From positions 124,001-188,000 of the IMG/VR virus record IMGVR_UViG_3300044712_001462: a stretch of DNA of 64,000 nucleotides. One strand, 5' to 3'. The position numbers and the translations under genes are program-made. The notes under the pieces are model-generated. The model saw only the letters and a list, made by a program, of their open reading frames with translations. It was not told where the DNA came from and ran no database searches. This document shows positions 1,983 to 40,272 of the stretch, in pieces (the stretch's first letter is position 1; every line of letters begins with the position of its first letter).

Positions 1983-2054
1983 AGCCGACGACTGGATTCG
2001 AACCAGTGTAAACTGATTTACAAAAACAGCGCCTAGCCACTCAGCCACGTCGGC
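1983..2054 (-). tRNA. trnT: tRNA-Thr(UGU), CCA not encoded
   Basis: Reverse complement GCCGACG-TGGCTGAGTGGCTAGGC-G-CTGTT TT TGT AA ATCAG-TTTAC-ACTGG TTCGAAT CCAGT-CGTCGGC-T. 7-bp acceptor stem, T-loop TTCGAAT, anticodon TGT, one U-U mismatch in the anticodon stem. Confidence 0.9.
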
Positions 2055-13438: not shown

Positions 13439-13467
13439 ATTATGCCCGAAATCCGGCCTGAATTTAG
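13439..13467 (-). promoter_or_regulatory. phage promoter class A (CTAAATT-N16-CATAAT)
   Basis: Reverse complement CTAAATT CAGGCCGGATTTCGGG CATAAT. Confidence 0.75.
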
Positions 13468-17506: not shown

Positions 17507-17548
17507 AGAAAGAAAAAGAGGACACAGGTTTTACGCTGTATCCTCTTT
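17507..17548 (-). terminator. promoter-proximal intrinsic terminator
   Basis: AAAGAGGATACAG...CTGTGTCCTCTTT followed by TTCTTTCT, just downstream of promoter 17575-17603. Confidence 0.75.
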
Positions 17549-17574
17549 GGGCCGAGGGACTATTCGGTCCACGT

Positions 17575-17603
17575 ATTATGCCGCCATTTTCAACGAAATT
17601 TAG
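17575..17603 (-). promoter_or_regulatory. phage promoter class A
   Basis: Reverse complement CTAAATT TCGTTGAAAATGGCGG CATAAT. Confidence 0.75.
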
Positions 17604-18787
17604 GCAGCTTCAGCCGTCTCAGTCTCCTTGTCAGAGGGCTCCTCAGCCGGGACCGGGTCAGGTCGCAACACCTTTCTTCGGGTCGTCTCAGAAGACATAC
17701 CCATGATCGAGGTGAACAATTCATCCATGCGTCCCAATACGAACTCACGCTGCGTCCCATCTTTCCGCAAACGATTCGCTACCGTCGTAGCATCCTCGCC
17801 TACCCCTTTCAGAACGTTGTGGAGCTCTTCGAACTGGGCCCCAATCTGGCGACCATTCAAGATGCCAAACGGCTCAATCTTCGACTTGTACTCCTCAATC
17901 GCTTTGAAGACGCGCTCAATCACGCCATCCTTAAACGACTTTTGCGTACCATCCTGCCAGCCGCGGATCGAAGACACCATCTGCTGCAAACCCATCGCCA
18001 TCGCTTCTTCGATCAACTCCGCCTGCTTCTCAGCGACTTCGGTAAATTGCGCATTCAGTCGCGCCTGTTGTCGCCGGTATTCAGCCGGGTTCACCGCCTT
18101 CAAATACTCCGGCAACTCGAAGTTGTAGGTCTCAAAGCCCACGCCGATCTCCTGGTGGAGCCGTTCAGACGTCGGGTAATCCGACTCGTCATGCAACTCT
18201 CGGAGACGCTCCCGACACGTCGCCATGACTTCTGACCAGTTATTAGCCAGCTCATCAATAGCCTGCCGGAAGTCTGAGATCAGATCGTTGATCTCATCCA
18301 GGAACACACGCACTTCCTCATTCTGATCCTGTTCGGTCTCCCCGCGGACACCAAACAAGCGCACCCCATCTTCGGGGTACTTGAGGGTTTTCGATTGCCA
18401 GTACTTGATGAGCTTGGCCTTGGCCACCTGAACCGCGTGAATCGAAGGATGCTTCGCATACAACACTTTAGTAAAGCGGAGATGCGAGGGATCGCAGTCC
18501 ACGCTGCCAGCCAGCTTATGCGCTGCATCACCCTTAATCTTCCGGCTCTTACTCAGGTCATTGAACTTCAACCGGAAAGCTCGGGCGACTGCCTTAATGG
18601 TCTGCCCAGCTTCACGATAGCGCTCACGCTGTACCGCACGATCTTCTGCTGGAGGCAGATCCGCCAGCATCTTATCCACCTGCTCTTTGGTCAGGTGCTT
18701 CGTTGTCGTCTTCTTCTTTTTCTTCGACGACTTCTTCCCCACGTGCTGCTTAAGCTTCTGTAACAATTCAGGAGAGATACTTGCCAT
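17600..18787 (-). CDS. helical coiled-coil protein, DUF3150-like, partner of the AAA ATPase
   Basis: YWQSKTLKYPEDGVRLF...RERLRELHDESDYP motif; coupled to the ATPase through TAATG. Confidence 0.55.
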   Translation of the reverse strand: MASISPELLQKLKQHVGKKSSKKKKKTTTKHLTKEQVDKMLADLPPAEDRAVQRERYREAGQTIKAVARAFRLKFNDLSKSRKIKGDAAHKLAGSVDCDPSHLRFTKVLYAKHPSIHAVQVAKAKLIKYWQSKTLKYPEDGVRLFGVRGETEQDQNEEVRVFLDEINDLISDFRQAIDELANNWSEVMATCRERLRELHDESDYPTSERLHQEIGVGFETYNFELPEYLKAVNPAEYRRQQARLNAQFTEVAEKQAELIEEAMAMGLQQMVSSIRGWQDGTQKSFKDGVIERVFKAIEEYKSKIEPFGILNGRQIGAQFEELHNVLKGVGEDATTVANRLRKDGTQREFVLGRMDELFTSIMGMSSETTRRKVLRPDPVPAEEPSDKETETAEAA

Positions 18788-21700
18788 TAGTTAACATTGG
18801 GTCGAACTACCGACCGCCTCTTACCTCCGCCAGTGATGTCTGACACGCTGACCACTTGTTTCGCTCCTACATCGTAAAGCCCCGGAGCTGAGGCGTTCAA
18901 ACATCGTCCAGAGGCCCAGGCTCGCAGATCCTGCAGTTTGGTATCTGCCATTCGAGTGACAGGTACCACCTGCTTCGCAGCTTCGTCCAGAGAAACCTCA
19001 CGAATTGCCGCTAGGCGACAGCACGCCTTAATTTCAGCACCCGTCCAGCCCTCACTCAGCGTAAGGAGACTGTGCTTCACCTTGTCTGTCCGCGACTCCG
19101 CATGGCCATACAGATGCAAGTAGATCTGCCAAATAGCCAGGCGCTCTTCCTCTGTGGGAACATCCACAAAGAACACCGCATCAAAACGCTCCGCCCGAGA
19201 GAATTCTGGTGGGAGCATCGAGATGTTGTTGCAATTATGAACCACAACCCCAGACGCCATAAACGAGTGATGGGGCTCCTCAATAACCACATCGTAAACA
19301 GTCTGCTCACCAAGCGGAGAGGGTTCAACAGACACCACACTGACCCACTTCTGAGACCAAATACGTCGAACCTGCTCCAGCTCGTCTGCAATTTCGCGAG
19401 CCGCAGACTCGGACATCTTGGCAACATAGTGATCTACAATCACCTGCCACAACTCCGCCGTATCCGCCGATATTAGCGGAGTGTACTGCCTGTAGTTTGG
19501 CAACACCGATGTATAGCGACCAGCCGCTTTTAAAATAATCTCCAAACAATCATGCATTCCCGGAACACTCCGAACTCCATCTCCGTTAACCTCCTTAGGC
19601 CTACATATCCGACTTTTCTTGTCCGGGTGCTGAAACGGAATGAGCTGTGCAAACCGATGACAAGACTCCGAATCGCGGATACTCAGCTTAGTTACATCCT
19701 TGCGAGGAAGCTTTCGCGAAATCGTTGCAACAGAACCTTGAATATCAAATCTCGTTAAGAGAAGTCGAAGCTGGTCGATCATGACTGGGCTAGTTACCGC
19801 AATCTCAATTCGCCCACGTTTACTGATATAGCCCTCGGCGTCAAAAAGACCCGCTATAAAGGACAACACCACATCCTTGTCCGGAGATGCCATTACATCT
19901 TGAGGTATTTCTCGCACACATTGCAGGCATAAGATGTCTGGAAAATACTGCTCAAACCAATCTAACAGAAGACGACGATCCAGATAGATGTAGTACGACT
20001 GTGCTTTTGGACGCTTATCAATAACCTTTGGCTCTACTCCAAACAAACTACGAATCAGCGAGCATAGGTGCTGAGTCAGACCTGCGCTAAACTCAGATAA
20101 TTGAAGCCGATGGGCCTTCCTGTTTAAAAGCTTACCTTTACCCCCGTCCCCGCAGCAAAATCCAAGAAAATACGCCAATTCTGCTGTTAAGTACTCTGGT
20201 TGTTTAACAGGTTTCTGTCGGGATCGTGCTGGTAACGGCAGATACCGTTTTGCGGGTTTTGATCCCACTGGAGCTTTAGCTTTAGAAAGCAATAGATCAT
20301 CAGCAGTAAGATGCTTCGCTTCTTTCTCAGCTATTTTACCGTTTTGAAAGACAAAGAATCTGTGATCAGGCGTTGCATCGATGAACCCAGCTGACGTACG
20401 TATGCGTAGCATGTCGCGAATACCGCGGCTGTACACTAGCCCGGAGCCAGATACCCACTGACCAGTCTCGTCATCCACACTCAGGAACGTTTCACGTTGG
20501 CCTACAAGCGACTCAAGTTTACAGATACGCCCGTCCGCCAACTCAACAAGTGTTCCACCGGCCAAACACGTACCGATGAAAAACACATCTGACGTATGGT
20601 CGTTCAACCAACTGAGTAACTTACCAAAAATGCGATCACCAGAGCCGCCATCTGTCATCGATGATGACTGACCTGCTCCGGACAGTGCTTTCTCGATTTC
20701 CACTTGTGTTACGAGATACCCGTTTCCGGTACCTCTCTTACGGTTACCCGTAAGGTCAGACTATTTCATCCTGTCGCTGCGACAGGGCCCCCGTTTCGAG
20801 ATCACTTGATCTCTACTTCCTTTCGGAATAGTCGTTGAACGTTTCAGTCATAGACTGACTTCGCTGCAGATAATCCAGGCTAGTGGACTTCCCTGCAATT
20901 AGAGGGCTTTGCATCGGCATGTCACCACGCCGAGGGACTAACGTTAATCCACAAAGAGAATGCACGGCTGCATAGCATCAGCCAGCTTCAGAGCCATCCG
21001 GACATTGGCATCCGTTTCACCCTGAAACTTCGATCTGAGTGCGCCCATATCCATCATGAGCACTTTGCGCTGGGTCTCATTACCCATCGCCTTAATGATC
21101 GCACTCTTACCGGCACCAGGCACACCAAGGAGCAGCATACCACGAGGCTGAAGCAGAGGATTATCTCGTCGCCGAAGTAGCTGCTTCGAGAACTCCTTGA
21201 ATTGCTGCAACCCACCCAACTGCGCATAAGTGTCTGTGCCTTTGTAGATCTCCAGTACACCGCGCTTCTTGAGATCCTGAGCCTTCAGGTCCCAGATCTC
21301 ATTGGGATCGAGCTTACCGGTCTTCGCCAGAGACAAACTCAGAGCATCCTCGAAACCACGTCGAGACAATCCCGCCGCAGCATCTAAGACCAGTCGTTTG
21401 TCGTCATCCGTTTTAGGTAACTCCGTCTCCGCACAGATGTTCTTAGCGATCGACCAGAGTTGTTCCTTACCTGGCAGCTCGTGCTCCAGGATTACAAAGT
21501 CCTTCTCTAGCTCTCGAGGGATCTCAATCATCGGAGAGAGCACAATGGCGCAGCAGGAGACCTGGCCCTCCGCCTTACAATCCGTTACCGCGTTCTGCAG
21601 AGCCTGCATGATGGGTAGGTTGTGAACCAGCTGCTGGTGATGGAAATTCTTGAGAATCCAGATGACGTGAGTAGCACCCTCGCTACCCTGGGACTCTTGA

Positions 21701-21981
21701 GCCTGCCGAAGGGCCAGAGACATCACAGGCATGTCCTGAACCAACGGGAGAGGCTTCATCTGGTAGTTAGTATTCTTCGAAATGAAATCTCTTAGCGTCT
21801 CAGCTGTATCTCGGGGGCATTTGAGGCCCGCGGCGAAGTCCCACACAATGACCGGCCATTGTCTCTCAGCACATACCGGTACGATCTCTGCGATAGCATC
21901 CCCAAACTCATAAGTCTCAACCCAAAGGCCGGTGAAACCGGCTCGCAAATACTGCCGTACTTGCTCCCCAAGTGCTGGCAC
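18787..21981 (-). CDS. Ycf46-like AAA+ ATPase, join(21981-20947, 20700-18787); ~537 aa after intron and intein removal
   Basis: Walker A GVPGAGKS; Walker B ILFVD|EIEK restored by splicing; sensor-1 FIGT|CNNI restored by intein excision; arginine-finger region PPEFSRAERFD. Confidence 0.9.
19234..20568 (-). mobile_element. intein (445 aa) with LAGLIDADG homing endonuclease
   Basis: N-terminal CLAGGT, block B ATPDHRFF, LAGLIDADG motifs LAYFLGFCCGDG and FIAGLFDAEG, block F TVYDV, C-terminal VVHN followed by +1 Cys. Confidence 0.93.
20701..20946 (-). ncRNA. group I self-splicing intron (246 nt, no ORF)
   Basis: The 5' exon ends in U, paired U.G in P1 (GGAU/GUCC). Core elements P AATTGCAGGGAA, Q ATCTGCAGC, R GTTCAACGACTA, S GAAATAGTCT; terminal G. 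Removal fuses GAT|GAA in frame. Confidence 0.93.
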
Positions 21982-34493: not shown

Positions 34494-35576
34494 AGACCGG
34501 CCTTTCTTTACTGTTTGACCTCACCATCCAGCAGCATTACACCATCGTAATGCGCTTTCTGGATCTTCTCGACCAGATACTCCCACACGTCGTCCCACGC
34601 CTCTTCTTCGCAATCACCAATCCCCACAGCTGTCACTGTGAACTCGTATGCCGCCATCACACACTCCTATACTTATCTCGCAACTCGCAGTAGAGCCGCT
34701 CGATCCCTTCGTCCGCCTCAATCCACATCGTTTCATACGGTGCAATGACTTTCTCCGCCGCTTCAATGACTCGCTCCGCAGTCTCTTTCACCGTATCCGC
34801 CCAGGGAACAGACACAGTCTCACTGAAGAAAAGACACCAGTCATCGCCGGTCCACTCACCAGAGCATCCCACATCACAAACCACGCTAAGCGCTAACATG
34901 GAATAACTAGATTTGTCCTCTGCGGTTAAGTCCCATTCACACTCATATGTCGGGTCAACCAGTGTTTTGTGGCCCGATACCCGTACGGTAACAGTCTCGT
35001 CGTTAGCCCCCAGAATCGAATCAATCCCCGTGCAACCTGTCGGCTCCAGGTCCGCATCCTTCCAGCCAAAACTGATTAGATCGAAACACCCAGACAAGCA
35101 CCGCCCGTCGTCGTCATAGCGCTTCAGATTGCGGCCTTCATTCATCTCTCGAAGGGTTATTCGTAACTCATCGATCGCGGCAGCAAGTTCGACCTCCTCC
35201 TGTTCACGGCAATACCAATCCCAGTCTTCGCTAGGACATCTCGCCATTTACTCCTCCTCATCCTCTTCTTCCTGCGCCGGTCTGCGGTTTGCCACGTCTT
35301 CAAACGTGCGCCCATCCGAGTCCTCCCCGCCAAAAAAGCAATAATCAAAGACATGCTCGAGGGCTGCATAAGTCTGGGGGTCCAGCTCCGTCGCATCCTC
35401 GTATTCCTCGAAATACGTGTTTACCAGCAGAACAAAAGCATCGGTAAGCTCCTGTTCTTTGAAGTGGTGCTGTATGGATTGCACCAAACAGTTAAATCTC
35501 GCAACTGGATCTTCTTTCATACCCGTCGCTCCTTTGGCTAGACATTCAGACAGAAATGGCAACAAAGAGAACTCTC

Positions 35577-35590
35577 TAATAGCGATATCA
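35577..35590. promoter_or_regulatory. operator-like motif inside a leader hairpin
   Basis: TAATAGCGATATCA just downstream of promoter 35602; embedded in the inverted repeat at 35571-35596. Confidence 0.55.
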
Positions 35591-35601
35591 GAGAGTCACA
35601 T

Positions 35602-35630
35602 ATTATGACGCAGAAGTGTCGAGAATTAAG
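35602..35630 (-). promoter_or_regulatory. phage promoter class A (CTTAATT-N16-CATAAT)
   Basis: Reverse complement CTTAATT CTCGACACTTCTGCGT CATAAT. Confidence 0.7.
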
Positions 35631-35633
35631 AAA

Positions 35634-35863
35634 CAGGCTGGATAGCACCACTGCCACCGCGTGTAGCAGTTCCGAAGCCGATCGGTTTGGGCCAAGGACG
35701 CCGCCTCGCTACGACTTGAAGCCCCGGGTTACCCCGCATTCCTGGCGCTATCCGAGACGGCCTTGCAGGCGCGAGGAGCCGTCTTACCCACATAGCCGCA
35801 CACATGCCAATGCGGTCTACCGGGTTACAGATGTTGTCCAAATCTAAGCCTGCCGACAACACC
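35634..35863 (-). ncRNA. candidate structured ncRNA (~230 nt), family not recognised
   Basis: At least eight nested helices; three helices contain G.U pairs that would be A.C on the plus strand; GUAA tetraloop. Confidence 0.6.
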
Positions 35864-35866
35864 TTC

Positions 35867-36400
35867 TCACCTGTTATCAACTTTCAAAAGAAATTGCGTA
35901 CCGTGCTGCTGGACGGAGCCAAAACGCCCTAGTTCTTCCGCGGTCCAAGCAGACAGATGACGCTCATAGATATTACCAAATACCTGACTCTGGGCGAAAA
36001 AGTCCACAGGAGTTGCTACAAGGGCTGTCTGGCAGTGTTTCTTTAGAAGTCCGAGAAACTCCAGGGCTGTAGGCTTTTCAAGATGCTCCAGGGCATCGAC
36101 GCACAGGGCCAAATCCCAGTGCTCTCCGCGGCGCATGAATTCAACCATGTCACCGATGATGATGTCGTTGTAGAGAGCTCGGTGCCAGGGTTGGACGTAG
36201 GGTTCGTAAATCTCCACGCCAGCCAGGTAGGTGCGCCGTCCTGGGTATTCTTTTTCTCCCCAACCATCCACATACTCCCGCACCAAGGCTCCCCACTTAC
36301 CGCTCCCAATACCCAGATCCACAATCCGTCTTGGCTTAGGCTTGAGCCACAGCAATTCACAGCAGACGGGACGAAGGTTATCGACAGAAGAGAAGGGCAT
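35867..36400 (-). CDS. SAM-dependent methyltransferase
   Basis: IVDLGIGSGKWG...GVEIY...DALEHL...VATP...ERHLSAW. Confidence 0.8.
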   Translation of the reverse strand: MPFSSVDNLRPVCCELLWLKPKPRRIVDLGIGSGKWGALVREYVDGWGEKEYPGRRTYLAGVEIYEPYVQPWHRALYNDIIIGDMVEFMRRGEHWDLALCVDALEHLEKPTALEFLGLLKKHCQTALVATPVDFFAQSQVFGNIYERHLSAWTAEELGRFGSVQQHGTQFLLKVDNR

Positions 36401-37206
36401 TAATGGAATACCTCAGGCATCGTTCCTCCAAACCGCCACAAACGCAGACCGTCAGGTAACTCTTCCTGAAACCAAGCTTCACGGCTCACGATCGTCTTAG
36501 GTCTTGTAGCTCGCTCACCTCGGTTGCAGTAGTAATCATTCTTGTCTCGAATGTGCTCTGGATCCTTACAGAACCCAAAGTGCAAACACACTGGCCCAGC
36601 TATCTGCCAAGCATCATCAGCAGAAACTAACCGTCTATCGTGCACGCGCAGACCAAAATCCTGTAACGGATGCGTACCTCGCTCAGGGTAATTGTGATTC
36701 TGTCGATACCGGTCTCCCGAACGCACCCGCCAGAACCGGATATGCTCGATGTCGTAATACCCGCCGGTAATGAACTGATCTGTTGTCTTCCAGAAATGGA
36801 GTGACGGAAACCGCCACGCCCACTTCGAGTCGTCCTGCCTTATCTGTTTGATAATGGCAGACAGCTCATCTCGACGATAGAACTCATCAGCATCAACCGC
36901 GATCAGCAACCCAGGCGTGACATTCTCCATATACCGATTACGAAGCTCACACTTAGCCTGGGCCCCTCCAGTTGAAGTCCAACCATGCTGGATGAATCGA
37001 ATCTTCTTATCTGGGTCTGGAAAATCTCGGACCAGGCTAGCTGTCTCATCAGTTGACAGACCATCCGATGTCACTCGTGTAGCCGGATACAGTCTGTCTG
37101 CTCCCTCCACGACTGTAATGCTATCAGCCAGCGGATAGTGCTGCTCCAGGTTACGCGCAATGTACTGAGCCTCGTTTAACACGATCATACCGATCGATAC
37201 GTGCAC
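36400..37206 (-). CDS. glycosyltransferase family 2 (GT-A)
   Basis: IGMIVLNEA...STDET...VDADEF (DxD motif)...LHFG. Confidence 0.85.
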   Translation of the reverse strand: MHVSIGMIVLNEAQYIARNLEQHYPLADSITVVEGADRLYPATRVTSDGLSTDETASLVRDFPDPDKKIRFIQHGWTSTGGAQAKCELRNRYMENVTPGLLIAVDADEFYRRDELSAIIKQIRQDDSKWAWRFPSLHFWKTTDQFITGGYYDIEHIRFWRVRSGDRYRQNHNYPERGTHPLQDFGLRVHDRRLVSADDAWQIAGPVCLHFGFCKDPEHIRDKNDYYCNRGERATRPKTIVSREAWFQEELPDGLRLWRFGGTMPEVFH

Positions 37207-37215
37207 GGCAGTCTC

Positions 37216-38220
37216 CTAACAGATAGCATTCAACCAAGCTTCCACATGATCTTCTGGCCTGTGTTTATCCGCAGCCCCAGGCCTTACAGCAGGTAAGGGT
37301 CCGCGCATAGCTGCACTAAGCTCAGCCACACTACCCAAGGACGTTACTATCAGTCCGGGTGTGTCTGGTGCTTCCAGAGCCGCGCTACCTACATCCGAGA
37401 CAATTACCGGACGTCTACGAGCCAAGGCTTCGGCAATGGTTAAGTCATACCCCTGTCCATAAGCTGTCGGTACCACTAAGGCGTCCACTCCGTCATACAC
37501 AGCAGGCATATCCCGACGTTTGACATTCGAGATTGTGGATAACCTCACGCCAGCCAACTGTGCTGCTTCGGCTGCTGTCTCAAATAACCGAGTTCCCTGT
37601 CCCGAAATAGAAGCGCACAGAAAAGTATCCTGACGCTTAACAGGAGCCGTCGGAGAACGGAAAAAGTACCCAGGAATCGGGTTGTAAACCAACTTAGCCT
37701 GGGGAAGACACATGTAGTGCCTGAGCATCTGATACTCGTGACGACTGATCCCTAGCACCGTATCAAAAGTAGCTAGAGCCTTACGTTCCCGAAGCATACC
37801 AGGCGCATCAAACCGGGGCTCCTCGCTCGTCTTACCTAGCCAGTACAGATTCCACTGGGTCAGAAACGATCCCCAGCCAAAACCGTGTAACGTACAGGCG
37901 GTTGTCGTATTCGGTAAGTCAGCCCACCAGGTCCTGTGTACATCTAGGGAGTCGCAATGCACGACGTCAGGCCTGATTCGCTCACAGAATGCGCGGCATC
38001 CTTCTGCAAACTCTGTCGAATAGACATGCGGCTCACAGTCAAGATGGTGAACAACCAGGTTAGTTACCTGTGTTACTGCCTGTAATGTTGGATGTCCGGT
38101 AGTTAAAACAAATACCGTATGTCCGGCGGCAGCCAGCGCTTCCGCTCTGTCCTGAACCACAAACGGCATCCCACCACTACGATGTGTAGGATATACCCGA
38201 CAGACAAGTATGATCTTCAT
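37216..38220 (-). CDS. glycosyltransferase family 4 (GT-B)
   Basis: MKIILV..YP...GG...LAAAGHTV.VLT; C-terminal VVPT..QGYDLTIAEALA..RPVIVSDVG. Confidence 0.85.
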   Translation of the reverse strand: MKIILVCRVYPTHRSGGMPFVVQDRAEALAAAGHTVFVLTTGHPTLQAVTQVTNLVVHHLDCEPHVYSTEFAEGCRAFCERIRPDVVHCDSLDVHRTWWADLPNTTTACTLHGFGWGSFLTQWNLYWLGKTSEEPRFDAPGMLRERKALATFDTVLGISRHEYQMLRHYMCLPQAKLVYNPIPGYFFRSPTAPVKRQDTFLCASISGQGTRLFETAAEAAQLAGVRLSTISNVKRRDMPAVYDGVDALVVPTAYGQGYDLTIAEALARRRPVIVSDVGSAALEAPDTPGLIVTSLGSVAELSAAMRGPLPAVRPGAADKHRPEDHVEAWLNAIC

Positions 38221-38720
38221 TTACGCGTGCCCCTTAGACAAGCCACAAAATTCAGAGTCAATCTACCACTATCCAGCGAACCAGCGTCATAAGCATGGAA
38301 GTCTAGTAGCGCCGGGCCCAGCATAGACAGATCAAATACGCCTGCTCTGGTGTCTGGTCCAAATGTATACCGCATCTTGTCGCCATCCGGACCTAAACCG
38401 TTCTCTCCGCGATGTCTGAACAACAGGTCCTGAATCCAAAAGCGTTTGCAACACCCCAGCACATTGGAGAACCACCTGCCAGGATCCGGCGAATAATGAA
38501 ACACATTACAAGCCACAACCAGATCCGTTAACTCTCTGCCTTGGTTATTGAGATCCCAGTCACTTACTCGCCAACGTAGAAACTCAGCCCTTGGATATAG
38601 ATTACTAACAATGCGACACTGGCGATCGTTCAACGATAACCCAATAATCTTGCTGACAGGCTCTTTGGACCACTTGAGAAAATATCTCTCGCAAGCCTCA
38701 TAGTCCTGGTCTACAGCCAT
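38217..38720 (-). CDS. degenerate methyltransferase-fold protein
   Basis: DLVVACNVFHYSPDP motif; the glycine-rich motif I is weak. Confidence 0.5.
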   Translation of the reverse strand: MAVDQDYEACERYFLKWSKEPVSKIIGLSLNDRQCRIVSNLYPRAEFLRWRVSDWDLNNQGRELTDLVVACNVFHYSPDPGRWFSNVLGCCKRFWIQDLLFRHRGENGLGPDGDKMRYTFGPDTRAGVFDLSMLGPALLDFHAYDAGSLDSGRLTLNFVACLRGTRK

Positions 38721-39325
38721 TCCAGCACCTTCTCTACGGGTACTAACAGTGTTCGAATCCGTTCCACGAGATCTCGAACAGGTTTTGGATCAGTCTCCCA
38801 GGGCACATGCAGAGTAAGGACTAGCGGGTACCCAAAGGTCGCCGGGATCCTCTCTACTAACTCGGAAGCTCGTCCATATAGCTCTTTACAGGCAGGCATG
38901 TAGACCGCTGCGCCAACCCGAGAAGGTAGGCAACTAGACGAGATATTTCCCTCATAACCTCCCAAGAAGATTGAGCCACCAGCTTCTGACCAGTTAAGGA
39001 CTGTCTGTCGCGTATAGGCGTTGAATGGTGGAATGTACACCCCTGTCTGAAGCTTTAACCTAGACTCGCGCATTCTGTCCGCCGAGACATCTGCTCCCCG
39101 AGTATGGTCGTAGCCATGAACCGACCACCGCTCTGGTTCCTGCAGATCGACACGCGCCGCAGCTCCCGGCTCCAACCAAGCCGGTACTGCGCCGTAAATG
39201 GCTGGTGTGCCTATCAGACCACAAGCACCCCTCCACCAGTCAAAATAACGCAGAGCGCCATCCGATCCCTGTTCCGGCTTGTCTCCCTCTCGTCTCCCTA
39301 CGTCATCAATCCGTAAGACAATCAT
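38711..39325 (-). CDS. NodB/polysaccharide deacetylase-like protein
   Basis: LRIDDVG, SVHGYDH, YIPPFNAY, LTLH. Confidence 0.7.
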   Translation of the reverse strand: MIVLRIDDVGRREGDKPEQGSDGALRYFDWWRGACGLIGTPAIYGAVPAWLEPGAAARVDLQEPERWSVHGYDHTRGADVSADRMRESRLKLQTGVYIPPFNAYTRQTVLNWSEAGGSIFLGGYEGNISSSCLPSRVGAAVYMPACKELYGRASELVERIPATFGYPLVLTLHVPWETDPKPVRDLVERIRTLLVPVEKVLEWL

Positions 39326-40272
39326 GCTGCCTCCACAAGCGCCCTAAACGATTCCTTCTTCTGCTCCCACGAACGCTGCTCAGCCCACTGTCGCGCAGCC
39401 AGACTAGCTTCTGAAATATCCTTCCCCAGCCACTTCTGACACAACAGCAACAGGTGGTGCGCATCCGGTAGGTACCAATCTACCGATCGGCCTATCTTTT
39501 TGGTCACCGCACGCGAGTTGATCCTGTCTAGAGCTGGGTATTCGTTCCACGGATTACCGTTCGTGGAGATGACAGGCATTCCACTGGCTGCCGCCTCGAG
39601 GATCTCTAAGCCAATACCGTCCACTGAGTGGGGCACAAGAAGAACATCCCCCTCTGTGTACAGCTCTGCGTTGGACTCAGGACTCGAAGTAGACGCCCAG
39701 TCCAGTTTCTTCTGGCTATAAACTGCAATAGGTATATCCGGCCAGTTATGCCTCAGCCGCTGCACGAGCCCGCCGCCTTTTCTCCCCAAGTACCCACCGT
39801 GCCCGTTGATAAACACAAAACGGCGACAAACAGTTCTCTGTCTGAATACAAACCTAGTCAGATCTACCGGCCAGGGAAAAAAGACACAGGGCAGCCGATC
39901 CTTAAACTGGTTGAAACAGTGTTCAGTCGGACACAGATAACGAGATACACCCCACTGTCGGGCGCTGTCTGGCAACCACTCCTGCATAGGAATGCAGATA
40001 GCAGGGCGACTGTACTCACGGCAGAGCGCAGGCAGAGTAGCAAAATAAGGGTGTTCGCAGAAAACAACCCTATCTACCTTGTCTCGCACGAAAGAGAGTC
40101 CAGCCTGCTCGTCACCGTATGTTGAGTACTCCGCGCGATCAGGAGTTGTGGTGGGAAAATCTCGATGTTTCACCACCAGCCAATGGGCTAAATCAACGTG
40201 GGAATCAATCTGGCGATTGAGTTCACCCAATCCCGAAGCGCAGCAATACCCCGCTAATCCAATACGCGACAT
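39322..40272 (-). CDS. glycosyltransferase (GT-B, GT4-like)
   Basis: PWPVDLTRF, GRKGG, DVLLVPHSVDGIGLEILEAAASGMPVISTN. Confidence 0.85.
   Translation of the reverse strand: MSRIGLAGYCCASGLGELNRQIDSHVDLAHWLVVKHRDFPTTTPDRAEYSTYGDEQAGLSFVRDKVDRVVFCEHPYFATLPALCREYSRPAICIPMQEWLPDSARQWGVSRYLCPTEHCFNQFKDRLPCVFFPWPVDLTRFVFRQRTVCRRFVFINGHGGYLGRKGGGLVQRLRHNWPDIPIAVYSQKKLDWASTSSPESNAELYTEGDVLLVPHSVDGIGLEILEAAASGMPVISTNGNPWNEYPALDRINSRAVTKKIGRSVDWYLPDAHHLLLLCQKWLGKDISEASLAARQWAEQRSWEQKKESFRALVEAA

What the first reader, a model, noticed from the sequence alone, without database searches (positions are those of the whole stretch)
35634..35863. Unrecognised ~230-nt highly structured RNA at the end of the glycosylation operon
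Seen on the minus strand: closing CAGGCT/AGCCTG followed by a U-rich tail; GGATAGCGCC/GGTGCTATCC enclosing four hairpins (CGGG-GTAA-CCCG, GGGC..CAAG/CTTG.GCCC, CCGA/TCGG, ACTGCTAC/GTGGCAGT); AGACGGC/GCCGTCT; ACCC..TAG.CCGCAT/GTGCGG.CTA..GGGT; an alternative GGTGTTGTC/GACAACATC; and a possible loop-loop pseudoknot CCTCGC/GCGAGG. G.U wobbles fix the strand, and the overlapping 84-aa ORF looks spurious. I do not recognise RNase P, SRP, tmRNA, intron or riboswitch signatures. Inference: a possibly new phage ncRNA or ribozyme class.
Basis: partly seen in the sequence, partly recalled or inferred. Interest (0 to 1): 0.72.

Follow-up and report, generated by a model that had tools for sequence, protein, structure and literature searches.

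The report
New pseudoknotted RNA in phage glycan operon
A roughly 240-nucleotide stretch after a sugar-modification gene of a 224-kb environmental phage encodes a real, conserved, intricately folded RNA that matches no catalogued RNA family; what it does is still unknown.

Summary
On the minus strand, window 35632-35874 folds into a compact RNA (MFE z = -3.0). It matches none of 4227 Rfam families, even at E<=10. Neighbouring genes led to five further lineages in environmental phage contigs: L008, L022, L024, L019 and an enlarged variant, L028. In the 6-sequence alignment, 93% of cells pair, against 35-50% when partners are slid, and 30 of 48 pairs carry compensatory double changes. One proposed hairpin (CCGA/UCGG) fails; a covarying long-range helix (Px) replaces it. 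No reading frame is conserved, and conserved G.U pairs fix the strand. The RNA always sits inside a glycan-gene cluster, just after a stop codon. It ends in a closing helix plus a U-rich run, followed by a conserved phage promoter (CTAAAT-N17-CATAAT, 7 sites in this genome). In relatives a CAP59-like glycosyltransferase gene follows; the window keeps only a ~30-nt remnant of it. My best guess, which is inferred, is a riboswitch-like attenuator or 3'-end domain at an operon junction. A trans-acting ncRNA or a ribozyme remains possible. The family is new, rare, and of unknown function.

The parts
35632..35874 (-). Whole structured RNA, from the 5' strand of the closing helix (overlapping the UGA stop of the 177-aa gene) to the 3' strand of P1
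   Evidence: Homologous stretches in L008, L022, L024, L019 and L028.
35869..35874 (-). ACAGGU, first candidate 5' strand of P1. It pairs with GCCUGU at 35633-35638 and gives a fully nested fold
   Evidence: Conserved as ACAGGUGAG in the window and the L008 group, although it is non-coding in L008, where the stop lies 6 nt earlier. It is used as P1 in the MFE folds of L008, L022 and L024.
35830..35863 (-). H1 hairpin GGUGUUGUC/GACAACAUC. Its loop (35847-35854, GGCAGGCU) is the second candidate 5' strand of P1
   Evidence: Present with different, compensating sequence in L008, L022 and L024 (GGGGAUUGC/GCAAUCUCC). Absent as such in L019 and L028.
35786..35825 (-). P2 long hairpin, peripheral and lineage-specific
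   Evidence: Compensatory pairs between window and L008. Replaced by other hairpins in L019 and L028.
35755..35784 (-). P3 hairpin. Its loop carries CCUCGC (35771-35776), the 5' half of the pseudoknot, and a conserved CCUGCAA
   Evidence: Helix 1: 7 pairs, 5 with double changes, 100% paired.
35744..35753 (-). P4 5' strand GGAUAGCGCC
   Evidence: helix 3: 10 pairs, 6 with double changes.
35640..35649 (-). P4 3' strand GGUGCUAUCC
   Evidence: helix 3. Point variants in other metagenomes keep the pairs.
35736..35741 (-). Px 5' strand GAA(U)GC. It pairs with GCUUC at 35674-35678 and encloses P5 and P6
   Evidence: helix 4: 6 pairs, 5 with double changes, 89% paired. The window copy needs a bulged U, which is the site of a U>A variant.
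35726..35735 (-). P5 short hairpin GGG-GUAA-CCC with a variable loop
   Evidence: helix 5.
35689..35724 (-). P6 two-part hairpin with invariant internal loop (UCAA / CGUCCU). Its terminal loop GCGAG(G) (35704-35709) is the 3' half of the pseudoknot
   Evidence: helices 6, 7 and 2.
35674..35688 (-). Invariant junction AAACCGAUC plus Px 3' strand (G)GCUUC. This is the most conserved single-stranded stretch
   Evidence: Alignments. The CCGA/UCGG hairpin here was rejected.
35651..35669 (-). P8 hairpin CUGCUAC/GUGGCAG with a CG-rich loop. Its length is variable, and much longer in L028
   Evidence: helix 8: the outer pairs covary..
35632..35639 (-). P1 3' strand AGCCUGUU, running into a U-rich stretch
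   Evidence: Contigs of run X3 break at 35627/35632.
35602..35630 (-). Phage promoter CTTAAT-N17-CATAAT, not part of the RNA but always next to it
   Evidence: Seven sites of CTAAAT-N17-CATAAT geometry in the 224-kb genome, all on the minus strand. The same box follows the RNA in every lineage.
35570..35601 (-). Remnant of the 5' end of a lost CAP59-like glycosyltransferase gene (ATG then TGA), forming a hairpin followed by a U run
   Evidence: Aligns to the start of the 192-194-aa gene of L008, L022 and L024. Listed as terminator-like.
35867..36400 (-). Upstream 177-aa class I SAM methyltransferase-like gene, last gene of the glycan cluster in the window
   Evidence: Pfam Methyltransf_23, E 3.8e-4, below the cut-off. 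Its orthologue precedes the RNA in L008, L022 and L024 but not in L019 or L028.

Best explanation
Shown: this is a genuine, conserved structured RNA of a family not in Rfam. It is read from the same strand as the surrounding genes and starts at or within about 35 nt of the stop codon of the preceding glycan gene. An outer helix P1 closes the fold. Two lineage-specific 5' hairpins come first, then the conserved core of about 156 nt. The core is hairpin P3, whose loop forms a pseudoknot with the loop of P6, and helix P4. P4 encloses helix Px (itself enclosing P5 and P6) and P8. Together these make two stacked three-way junctions with invariant junction nucleotides (AACCG, GAAC, UCAA/CGUCCU). P1 is followed directly by a U-rich run and then by a conserved phage promoter.

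Inferred: the RNA is made as the 3' part of the upstream glycan-gene transcript and acts in cis at the junction of two transcription units. Its compact, pocket-like core binds a small molecule or a protein. Binding sets whether P1 forms in front of the U run, with two upstream CAGG copies offering alternative partners for the 3' CCUG. That would tune termination or read-through into the downstream glycosyltransferase genes and fix a stable 3' end. I rate the existence of the RNA family at about 0.95 and this riboswitch-like attenuator mechanism at about 0.35.
For: - **Fold and strand:**
- **No known family:**
- **Six lineages found through synteny and covariance models:**
- **Covariation:** 93% of cells paired against 35-50% when slid; 30 of 48 pairs have double changes; 0 of 500 shuffles reach the observed values on four of five measures (1 of 500 on further pair types).
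- **Pseudoknot covaries:**, pair 16-95.
- **Point variants:** near-identical copies occur in four other metagenomes, and 5 of 6 stem substitutions keep pairing. The sixth cannot be judged because its partner is not covered.
- **No conserved ORF:**
- **P1 plus U-rich run in every lineage:**
- **Terminator-like position:** another promoter of the same class (genome 187454) is preceded by a canonical hairpin-plus-U terminator, and the RNA occupies that position here.
- **Constant context:** always inside glycan clusters, before the promoter and the CAP59-like GT.
- **Typical aptamer-like pattern:** invariant junction nucleotides with variable peripheral hairpins, as seen in ligand-binding or catalytic RNAs (established knowledge of riboswitch architecture).
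Against: - No transcript ends are known. The 'RNA-Seq' contigs that overlap the RNA are low depth, and one run is flagged as probably DNA.
- The conserved promoter lies downstream of the RNA, so the RNA is not in the classical 5'-leader position of a riboswitch.
- P1 closes a domain of 200 nt or more, which is unlike canonical intrinsic terminators, and the scan tool did not call it.
- No ligand is suggested by any family match.
- The window phage keeps an intact RNA although the downstream GT gene is gone, so the function cannot depend on that gene alone.
- Only six lineages are known, and three of them (L008, L022, L024) are close kin.
- The alignment used for counting was fitted to the model.
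Confidence: 0.4

Rival explanations
1. The RNA is a stable stand-alone non-coding RNA acting in trans. It would be released from the 3' end of the operon transcript, or made from its own promoter as may be the case in L019. It would bind a phage or host protein as a scaffold, decoy or anti-defence RNA, or self-associate through its palindromic loops.
For: - The compact pseudoknotted fold is closed by P1, with sharp module boundaries: contigs of run X3 break at 35627-35632.
- It is retained and still structurally constrained in the window lineage after loss of the downstream GT gene.
- It is found after three different upstream genes (MT, GT2, LicD).
- In L019 a sigma70-like TTGATG-N17-TAAAAT box, read by eye, lies just upstream.
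- The CG-rich P8 loops are palindromic (CGCG, GCGCGC).
Against: No partner protein is encoded next to it in all lineages. In five of six lineages there is no room for a promoter of its own. There are no expression data. Its strict confinement to glycan clusters suggests a cis role.
Confidence: 0.3
2. The RNA is a self-cleaving or otherwise catalytic RNA that processes the polycistronic glycan transcript, possibly in response to a metabolite as glmS does.
For: Its size and complexity (about 156-nt core, pseudoknot, two three-way junctions, invariant junction nucleotides) fall in the range of glmS-type ribozymes (established knowledge). It has an amino-sugar and glycan gene context.
Against: No match to any ribozyme family. 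No recognisable cleavage-site motif. Nothing was tested biochemically.
Confidence: 0.1
3. The RNA is only an elaborate terminator or 3'-end protection structure with no ligand or partner. It would block 3' exonucleases and insulate the upstream operon from the next promoter.
For: P1 and P4 are followed by a U-rich run and sit where another promoter of the same class has a plain terminator.
Against: A stabiliser would not need invariant junction nucleotides, a covarying pseudoknot and a conserved multi-junction core across lineages whose stems have diverged heavily. Related phages manage the same junction with no RNA at all (L014, L015, L030).
Confidence: 0.12
4. There is no RNA here: the region is the 84-aa (or antisense 80-aa) protein gene, or a DNA-level element such as an origin or packaging site.
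For: Open frames of 80-94 codons exist on both strands in the window.
Against: The open frames differ in strand and frame between homologues, and L019 has none above 45 codons. Indels are not multiples of three. Conserved G.U pairs would be A.C mismatches on the other strand or in DNA hairpins.
Confidence: 0.02

Closest known systems
EAR (eps-associated RNA) of Bacillales exopolysaccharide operons
   Same: Both are pseudoknotted, structured RNAs embedded between genes of a polysaccharide or glycan biosynthesis operon and thought to act in cis on transcription of that operon (established knowledge; context here).
   Different: There was no hit to any Rfam family at all. This RNA is larger and has a different architecture. 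It is phage-borne and is followed by a U run and a promoter. EAR promotes processive antitermination; the function here is unknown.
glmS ribozyme-riboswitch
   Same: Similar size, a pseudoknotted multi-helix core and a link to amino-sugar metabolism.
   Different: glmS lies in a 5' leader and has a defined conserved core, and no match was found. Cleavage and ligand binding were not tested here.
Large multi-junction riboswitch aptamers (lysine, cobalamin)
   Same: A closing helix around a multi-helix junction, a long-range loop-loop contact, invariant junction nucleotides, and variable peripheral hairpins.
   Different: No sequence or structure match. The RNA lies upstream of the nearest conserved promoter rather than between promoter and gene. 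No ligand is known.
Orphan complex RNAs common in phages and prophages (GOLLD, ROOL, HEARO)
   Same: All are phage-associated, intricately folded, supported by covariation, and of unknown function when discovered.
   Different: Those are larger or tied to specific neighbouring genes, and none matches. This family is confined to glycan-gene clusters of one group of environmental phages.
Group I intron (one is present elsewhere in this window, 20737-20956)
   Same: Similar length (about 220-250 nt), same phage, pseudoknotted RNA.
   Different: The same Rfam scan that finds the real intron finds nothing here. The flanking genes are complete and separate, so nothing needs splicing.

Membership tests
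Any Rfam 15 family (4227 covariance models) | Score at or above the family's gathering threshold, or at least a suggestive E-value | tested here: not met
   Window at gathering threshold: only the group I intron at 20737-20956 and a tRNA. Region 35450-36000 at E<=10: one chance hit outside the RNA. Five homologous loci at E<=1: nothing.
Group I intron | Match to the intron core model (P3-P9 with G-binding site) | tested here: not met
   RF00028 scores 71 bits at 20737-20956 but gives no hit at 35632-35874, even at E<=10.
Group I intron | Interrupts a gene whose exons join into one reading frame | tested here: not met
   The upstream gene ends with its own stop; in L008 the stop lies 6 nt before the RNA. 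The downstream gene has its own start, and its N-terminus aligns to that of the uninterrupted L014 gene.
tRNA / tmRNA | Cloverleaf or tRNA-like domain with tag ORF, as detected by ARAGORN | tested here: not met
   The only ARAGORN hit in the window is tRNA-Thr at 1983-2054.
Riboswitch (generic) | Conserved aptamer-like fold: covarying stems and invariant junction nucleotides | tested here: met
   30 of 48 pairs with double changes. Invariant AACCG, GAAC and UCAA/CGUCCU.
Riboswitch (generic) | Lies in the 5' leader between the promoter and the regulated gene, with an expression platform | tested here: inconclusive
   The conserved promoter lies downstream of the RNA. P1 plus the U run could serve as a platform for read-through from the upstream operon. 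No transcript mapping is available.
Riboswitch (generic) | Specific binding of a small-molecule ligand | not testable with these tools
   Needs in-line probing, ITC or similar assays.
Self-cleaving ribozyme | Site-specific self-scission | not testable with these tools
   No ribozyme family matches. A biochemical assay is required.
Intrinsic (Rho-independent) terminator | G+C-rich stem immediately followed by a U run | tested here: inconclusive
   P1 (6-8 bp) is followed by a U-rich run in all lineages, but it closes a domain of more than 200 nt and the scan did not list it. The scan did list the remnant hairpin at 35570-35597.
Protein-coding gene (84-aa ORF 35626-35880, or 80-aa antisense ORF) | Reading frame and protein sequence conserved in homologues | tested here: not met
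   The longest open stretches differ in strand and frame among the six homologues, and L019 has at most 45 codons. No gene was called in the gap in any related contig.

The most novel reading that the evidence does not exclude
This is the first representative of a new riboswitch or ribozyme class, carried by environmental jumbo-type phages. It would sense a metabolite of the phage's own glycan or amino-sugar pathway (or SAM/SAH) and control expression across a junction inside the glycosylation gene cluster.
Probability: 0.3. Interest if true: 0.85.

Novelty: new member of a known kind. Interest (0 to 1): 0.64.

Why it matters
Complex folded RNAs with a pseudoknot, multi-way junctions and invariant junction nucleotides have, when eventually explained, mostly turned out to be riboswitches, ribozymes or RNP scaffolds. 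This one comes with a defined secondary structure, six natural variants that serve as ready-made covariation controls, and a narrow functional context: glycan-modification clusters of large environmental phages. It is therefore directly testable in vitro even though the host is unknown. If it senses a metabolite, it would be a rare case of a phage regulating its own glycosylation machinery through RNA. If it does not, it still adds a validated family and covariance model for annotating phage metagenomes, and it removes a spurious 84-aa ORF.

Tried and rejected
- **Rfam:** gathering and permissive thresholds on the window and on five homologous loci gave nothing.
- **ARAGORN:** nothing at the locus.
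- **Cultured phages:** blastn of the locus, and of the L028 variant, against 50,697 phage records gave no match.
- **Own genome:** a single copy only.
- **Relatives through the 196-aa downstream protein:** six IMG/VR loci carry no RNA by nhmmer, blastn or CM; five of their six whole records were searched as well.
- **Exact or degenerate pattern scans:** seven scans of viral contigs, two of metagenome contigs and two of genome contigs. They recovered only the L019 contig. Ten genome-contig hits were chance, with no CM support. My early patterns were too strict: they required TCCTTGG, which L022 and L024 lack.
- **GT2 relatives lacking the RNA:** L014, L015, L016, L017, L030 and L031.
- **Rejected ideas:**
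  - CCGA/UCGG hairpin.
  - 'TCATAATATG' as an RNA-level motif or a fixed start codon; it is the -10 box of a recurrent phage promoter.
  - MT plus RNA as an obligatory pair; L019 and L028 have no MT.
  - Intron hypotheses.
  - The 84-aa ORF.
- **Literature:** searches found nothing relevant.
- **Not run:** Complex prediction for RNA-ligand or RNA dimer, because such scores for an RNA without known relatives would not be interpretable.

Full report
**Setting.** The window is bases 124001-188000 of a 224.5-kb IMG/VR virus record. Genes around the finding run on the minus strand and form a glycan-modification cluster:
- GT1/GT4-type glycosyltransferases at 39322-40272 and 37216-38220;
- a small methyltransferase at 38217-38720;
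- a GT2 at 36400-37206;
- a 177-aa class I methyltransferase-like gene at 35867-36400.

The next convincing gene starts at 35520. The stretch in between is the finding.

**The observation.** It folds to -107.8 kcal/mol, z = -3.0 against dinucleotide shuffles. The plus strand gives z = -1.95. Rfam 15 finds only a group I intron (20737-20956) and a tRNA elsewhere in the window. It finds nothing at this locus even at E<=10, and ARAGORN finds nothing there either.

**Homologues.** DNA and pattern searches of public collections were almost empty, so I went through the neighbouring proteins.
- The 177-aa protein has one other cluster (64% identity). Its contigs (L008-L013) show the same GT2-MT order followed by a 266-nt gap that aligns to the window RNA.
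- A GT2 relative (63% identity) led to L019/L020, with a 313-nt gap after GT2 and no methyltransferase. A covariance model built from window plus L008 hits that gap at 61.6 bits, E 4e-15.
- The gene after the RNA in L008 and L019 belongs to one family. Its more distant, longer relatives carry Pfam CAP59_mtransfer.
- Searching that family gave L022/L023 and L024/L025 (DegT aminotransferase, then 177-aa MT, then RNA, then GT) and L026/L027, which are longer contigs of the L019 type.
- It also gave L028/L029, where a 478-nt gap between a LicD gene and a full-length CAP59-like GT holds an enlarged variant. The second model detects this variant at 29.2 bits, E 6e-5.
- Several other relatives of the cluster lack the RNA (L014-L017, L030, L031).
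- The own genome has a single copy.
- None of the homologous loci hits Rfam.

**Structure.** On the six-sequence alignment A8, 93% of cells form standard pairs. When partners are slid by 1-3 columns the figure is 35-50%. Thirty of 48 pairs show a change on both sides, and no shuffle out of 500 reaches the observed values on four of the five measures (1 of 500 on further pair types). The five-sequence alignment gives the same picture. The alignment was fitted to the model, which inflates 'percent paired' somewhat. However, the first pairwise RNAalifold on a plain MAFFT alignment already gave 14 compensatory pairs.

Supported helices:
- P3, P4, P5, both parts of P6, and P8.
- The loop-loop pseudoknot (P3 loop CCUCGC with P6 loop GCGAG). 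It changes to CCUCAC/GUGAG in L019. In L028 I read it by eye as GACCAC/GUGGUC, one register over; in the register counted, L028 breaks three of the five pseudoknot pairs.

Its conserved GCUUC pairs instead with the junction 3' of P4 (helix Px: L008 AGAGGC/GCUUCU; L019 UGACGC/GCGUCA; 5 of 6 pairs with double changes). The core is therefore two stacked three-way junctions, not a five-way junction.

The outer helix P1 also changes in a compensating way between lineages: GGCAGGCU/AGCCUGUU, GGCAGG/CCUGUC, GGCAGG/CCUGCC, and GGUUAG/CUAACC or UUAGCU/AGCUAA. In the window group a second CAGG copy (ACAGGUGAG, overlapping the stop codon here but non-coding in L008) can form the same helix. That leaves open a pseudoknotted, a nested or a switching arrangement.

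H1 and P2 are real in the window group, but L019 and L028 have other hairpins in their place. Invariant single-stranded stretches are AACCG, GAAC and the P6 internal loop UCAA/CGUCCU. Several G.U pairs conserved in all or most sequences fix the transcribed strand.

**Not a gene.** The longest open stretches over the region differ in strand and frame among homologues, and L019 has none above 45 codons. Gene callers left the gap empty in every related contig.

**Population data.** Public runs from rhizosphere, activated sludge, groundwater, wetland and wastewater hold 95-99% identical fragments. Of six substitutions that fall in stems, five keep the pair (AU>GU, GU>AU, UG>CG twice, GU>AU). The partner of the sixth is not covered by the contig. 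Two of the runs are labelled RNA-Seq, and their only contigs on the 801-nt stretch overlap the RNA. Depth is low and one run is flagged as probably DNA, so this is not evidence of transcription.

**Surroundings.** An 11-nt motif (GTCATAATAT) 30 nt downstream of P4 is invariant in the five close lineages, and L028 keeps GTCATAAT. It is not part of the RNA. Together with CTTAAT 17 nt upstream, it matches a box, CTAAAT-N17-CATAAT(A), that occurs seven times in this genome with the same spacing, always on the minus strand. Five of those sites match both hexamers exactly, against about 0.03 exact matches expected by chance. It is a phage promoter class, and a copy follows the RNA in every lineage.

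In L008, L022, L024, L019 and L028 the promoter is followed by the CAP59-like GT gene. In the window that gene is gone, leaving about 30 nt of its start (ATG, then TGA) as a hairpin with a U run. At another promoter of this class (genome 187454) a canonical terminator sits where the RNA sits here. In run X3, contigs break between 35627 and 35632, exactly between P1 and the -35 box.

**Interpretation.** Shown:
- a new, conserved, pseudoknotted RNA family;
- its transcription direction is inferred from G.U pairs;
- it is always located at a junction inside phage glycan clusters, right after a stop codon;
- it ends in P1 plus a U-rich run before a promoter.

Inferred: it is the 3' part of the upstream transcript and works in cis as a regulated terminator or 3'-end domain whose conserved core binds a ligand or protein (about 0.35). 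Rivals are a processed trans-acting RNA (0.3), a ribozyme (0.1) and a plain stabiliser or terminator (0.12). The protein-coding or DNA-element reading is essentially excluded.

Two facts weigh against a role limited to regulating the downstream GT: the RNA persists in the window lineage after loss of that gene, and it appears after three different upstream genes.

**Comparison with known systems.** In context it resembles EAR of Bacillus eps operons. In architecture it resembles large junction-type aptamers and glmS. In status it resembles the orphan phage RNAs GOLLD, ROOL and HEARO. It is a member of none of these; the membership tests are listed separately.

**Novelty.** This is a new family of a familiar kind of object, an orphan complex structured RNA. 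It is rare (six lineages, all uncultured phages) and its function is unknown. No cultured relative or host was identified; the best phage protein matches are only about 36% identical.

Noticed in passing
window 18787-21981 (-), intron at 20737-20956: The group I intron (RF00028, 71 bits) splits an AAA+ ATPase gene. The downstream exon also carries an intein with a LAGLIDADG domain, so one gene holds both an intron and an intein.
   Followed up: partly
window -10 boxes at 13444, 14166, 17580, 35607, 63454 (minus strand); genome 38026 and 196185: There is a recurrent phage promoter-like box CTAAAT-N17-CATAAT(A), usually overlapping the last codons of the preceding gene. It may be a middle or late promoter class of this phage group.
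   Followed up: partly
window about 17510-17580 (-): One of these promoters is followed, about 30 nt after its -10 box, by a terminator-like hairpin with a U run. This suggests a very short transcript or an attenuator.
   Followed up: no
window 35570-35601 (-): This is a remnant of the start of a CAP59-like glycosyltransferase gene that is intact in all five related lineages. The window has ATG followed directly by TGA, so the gene was deleted in this lineage.
   Followed up: yes
window 35627-35632: In an activated-sludge run, contigs that are 95-99% identical break here, and a 64-nt promoter-plus-remnant piece has unlike flanks on both sides. The RNA and the promoter look like separately shuffled modules, or the low-depth contigs are chimeric.
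   Followed up: no
L028 1295-1680: This is an enlarged (about 380-nt) variant of the RNA with long insertions in P6 and P8 and two extra 5' hairpins. It sits between a LicD gene and a full-length CAP59-like GT. Its exact helix correspondence in P6/Px is unresolved.
   Followed up: partly
window 1983-2054 (-): tRNA-Thr (UGU) is encoded by the phage.
   Followed up: no
L017 4859-5178: A more distant relative has a 320-nt gap after its GT2 gene with no match to the RNA model. Whether it holds an unannotated ORF or another RNA was not examined.
   Followed up: no
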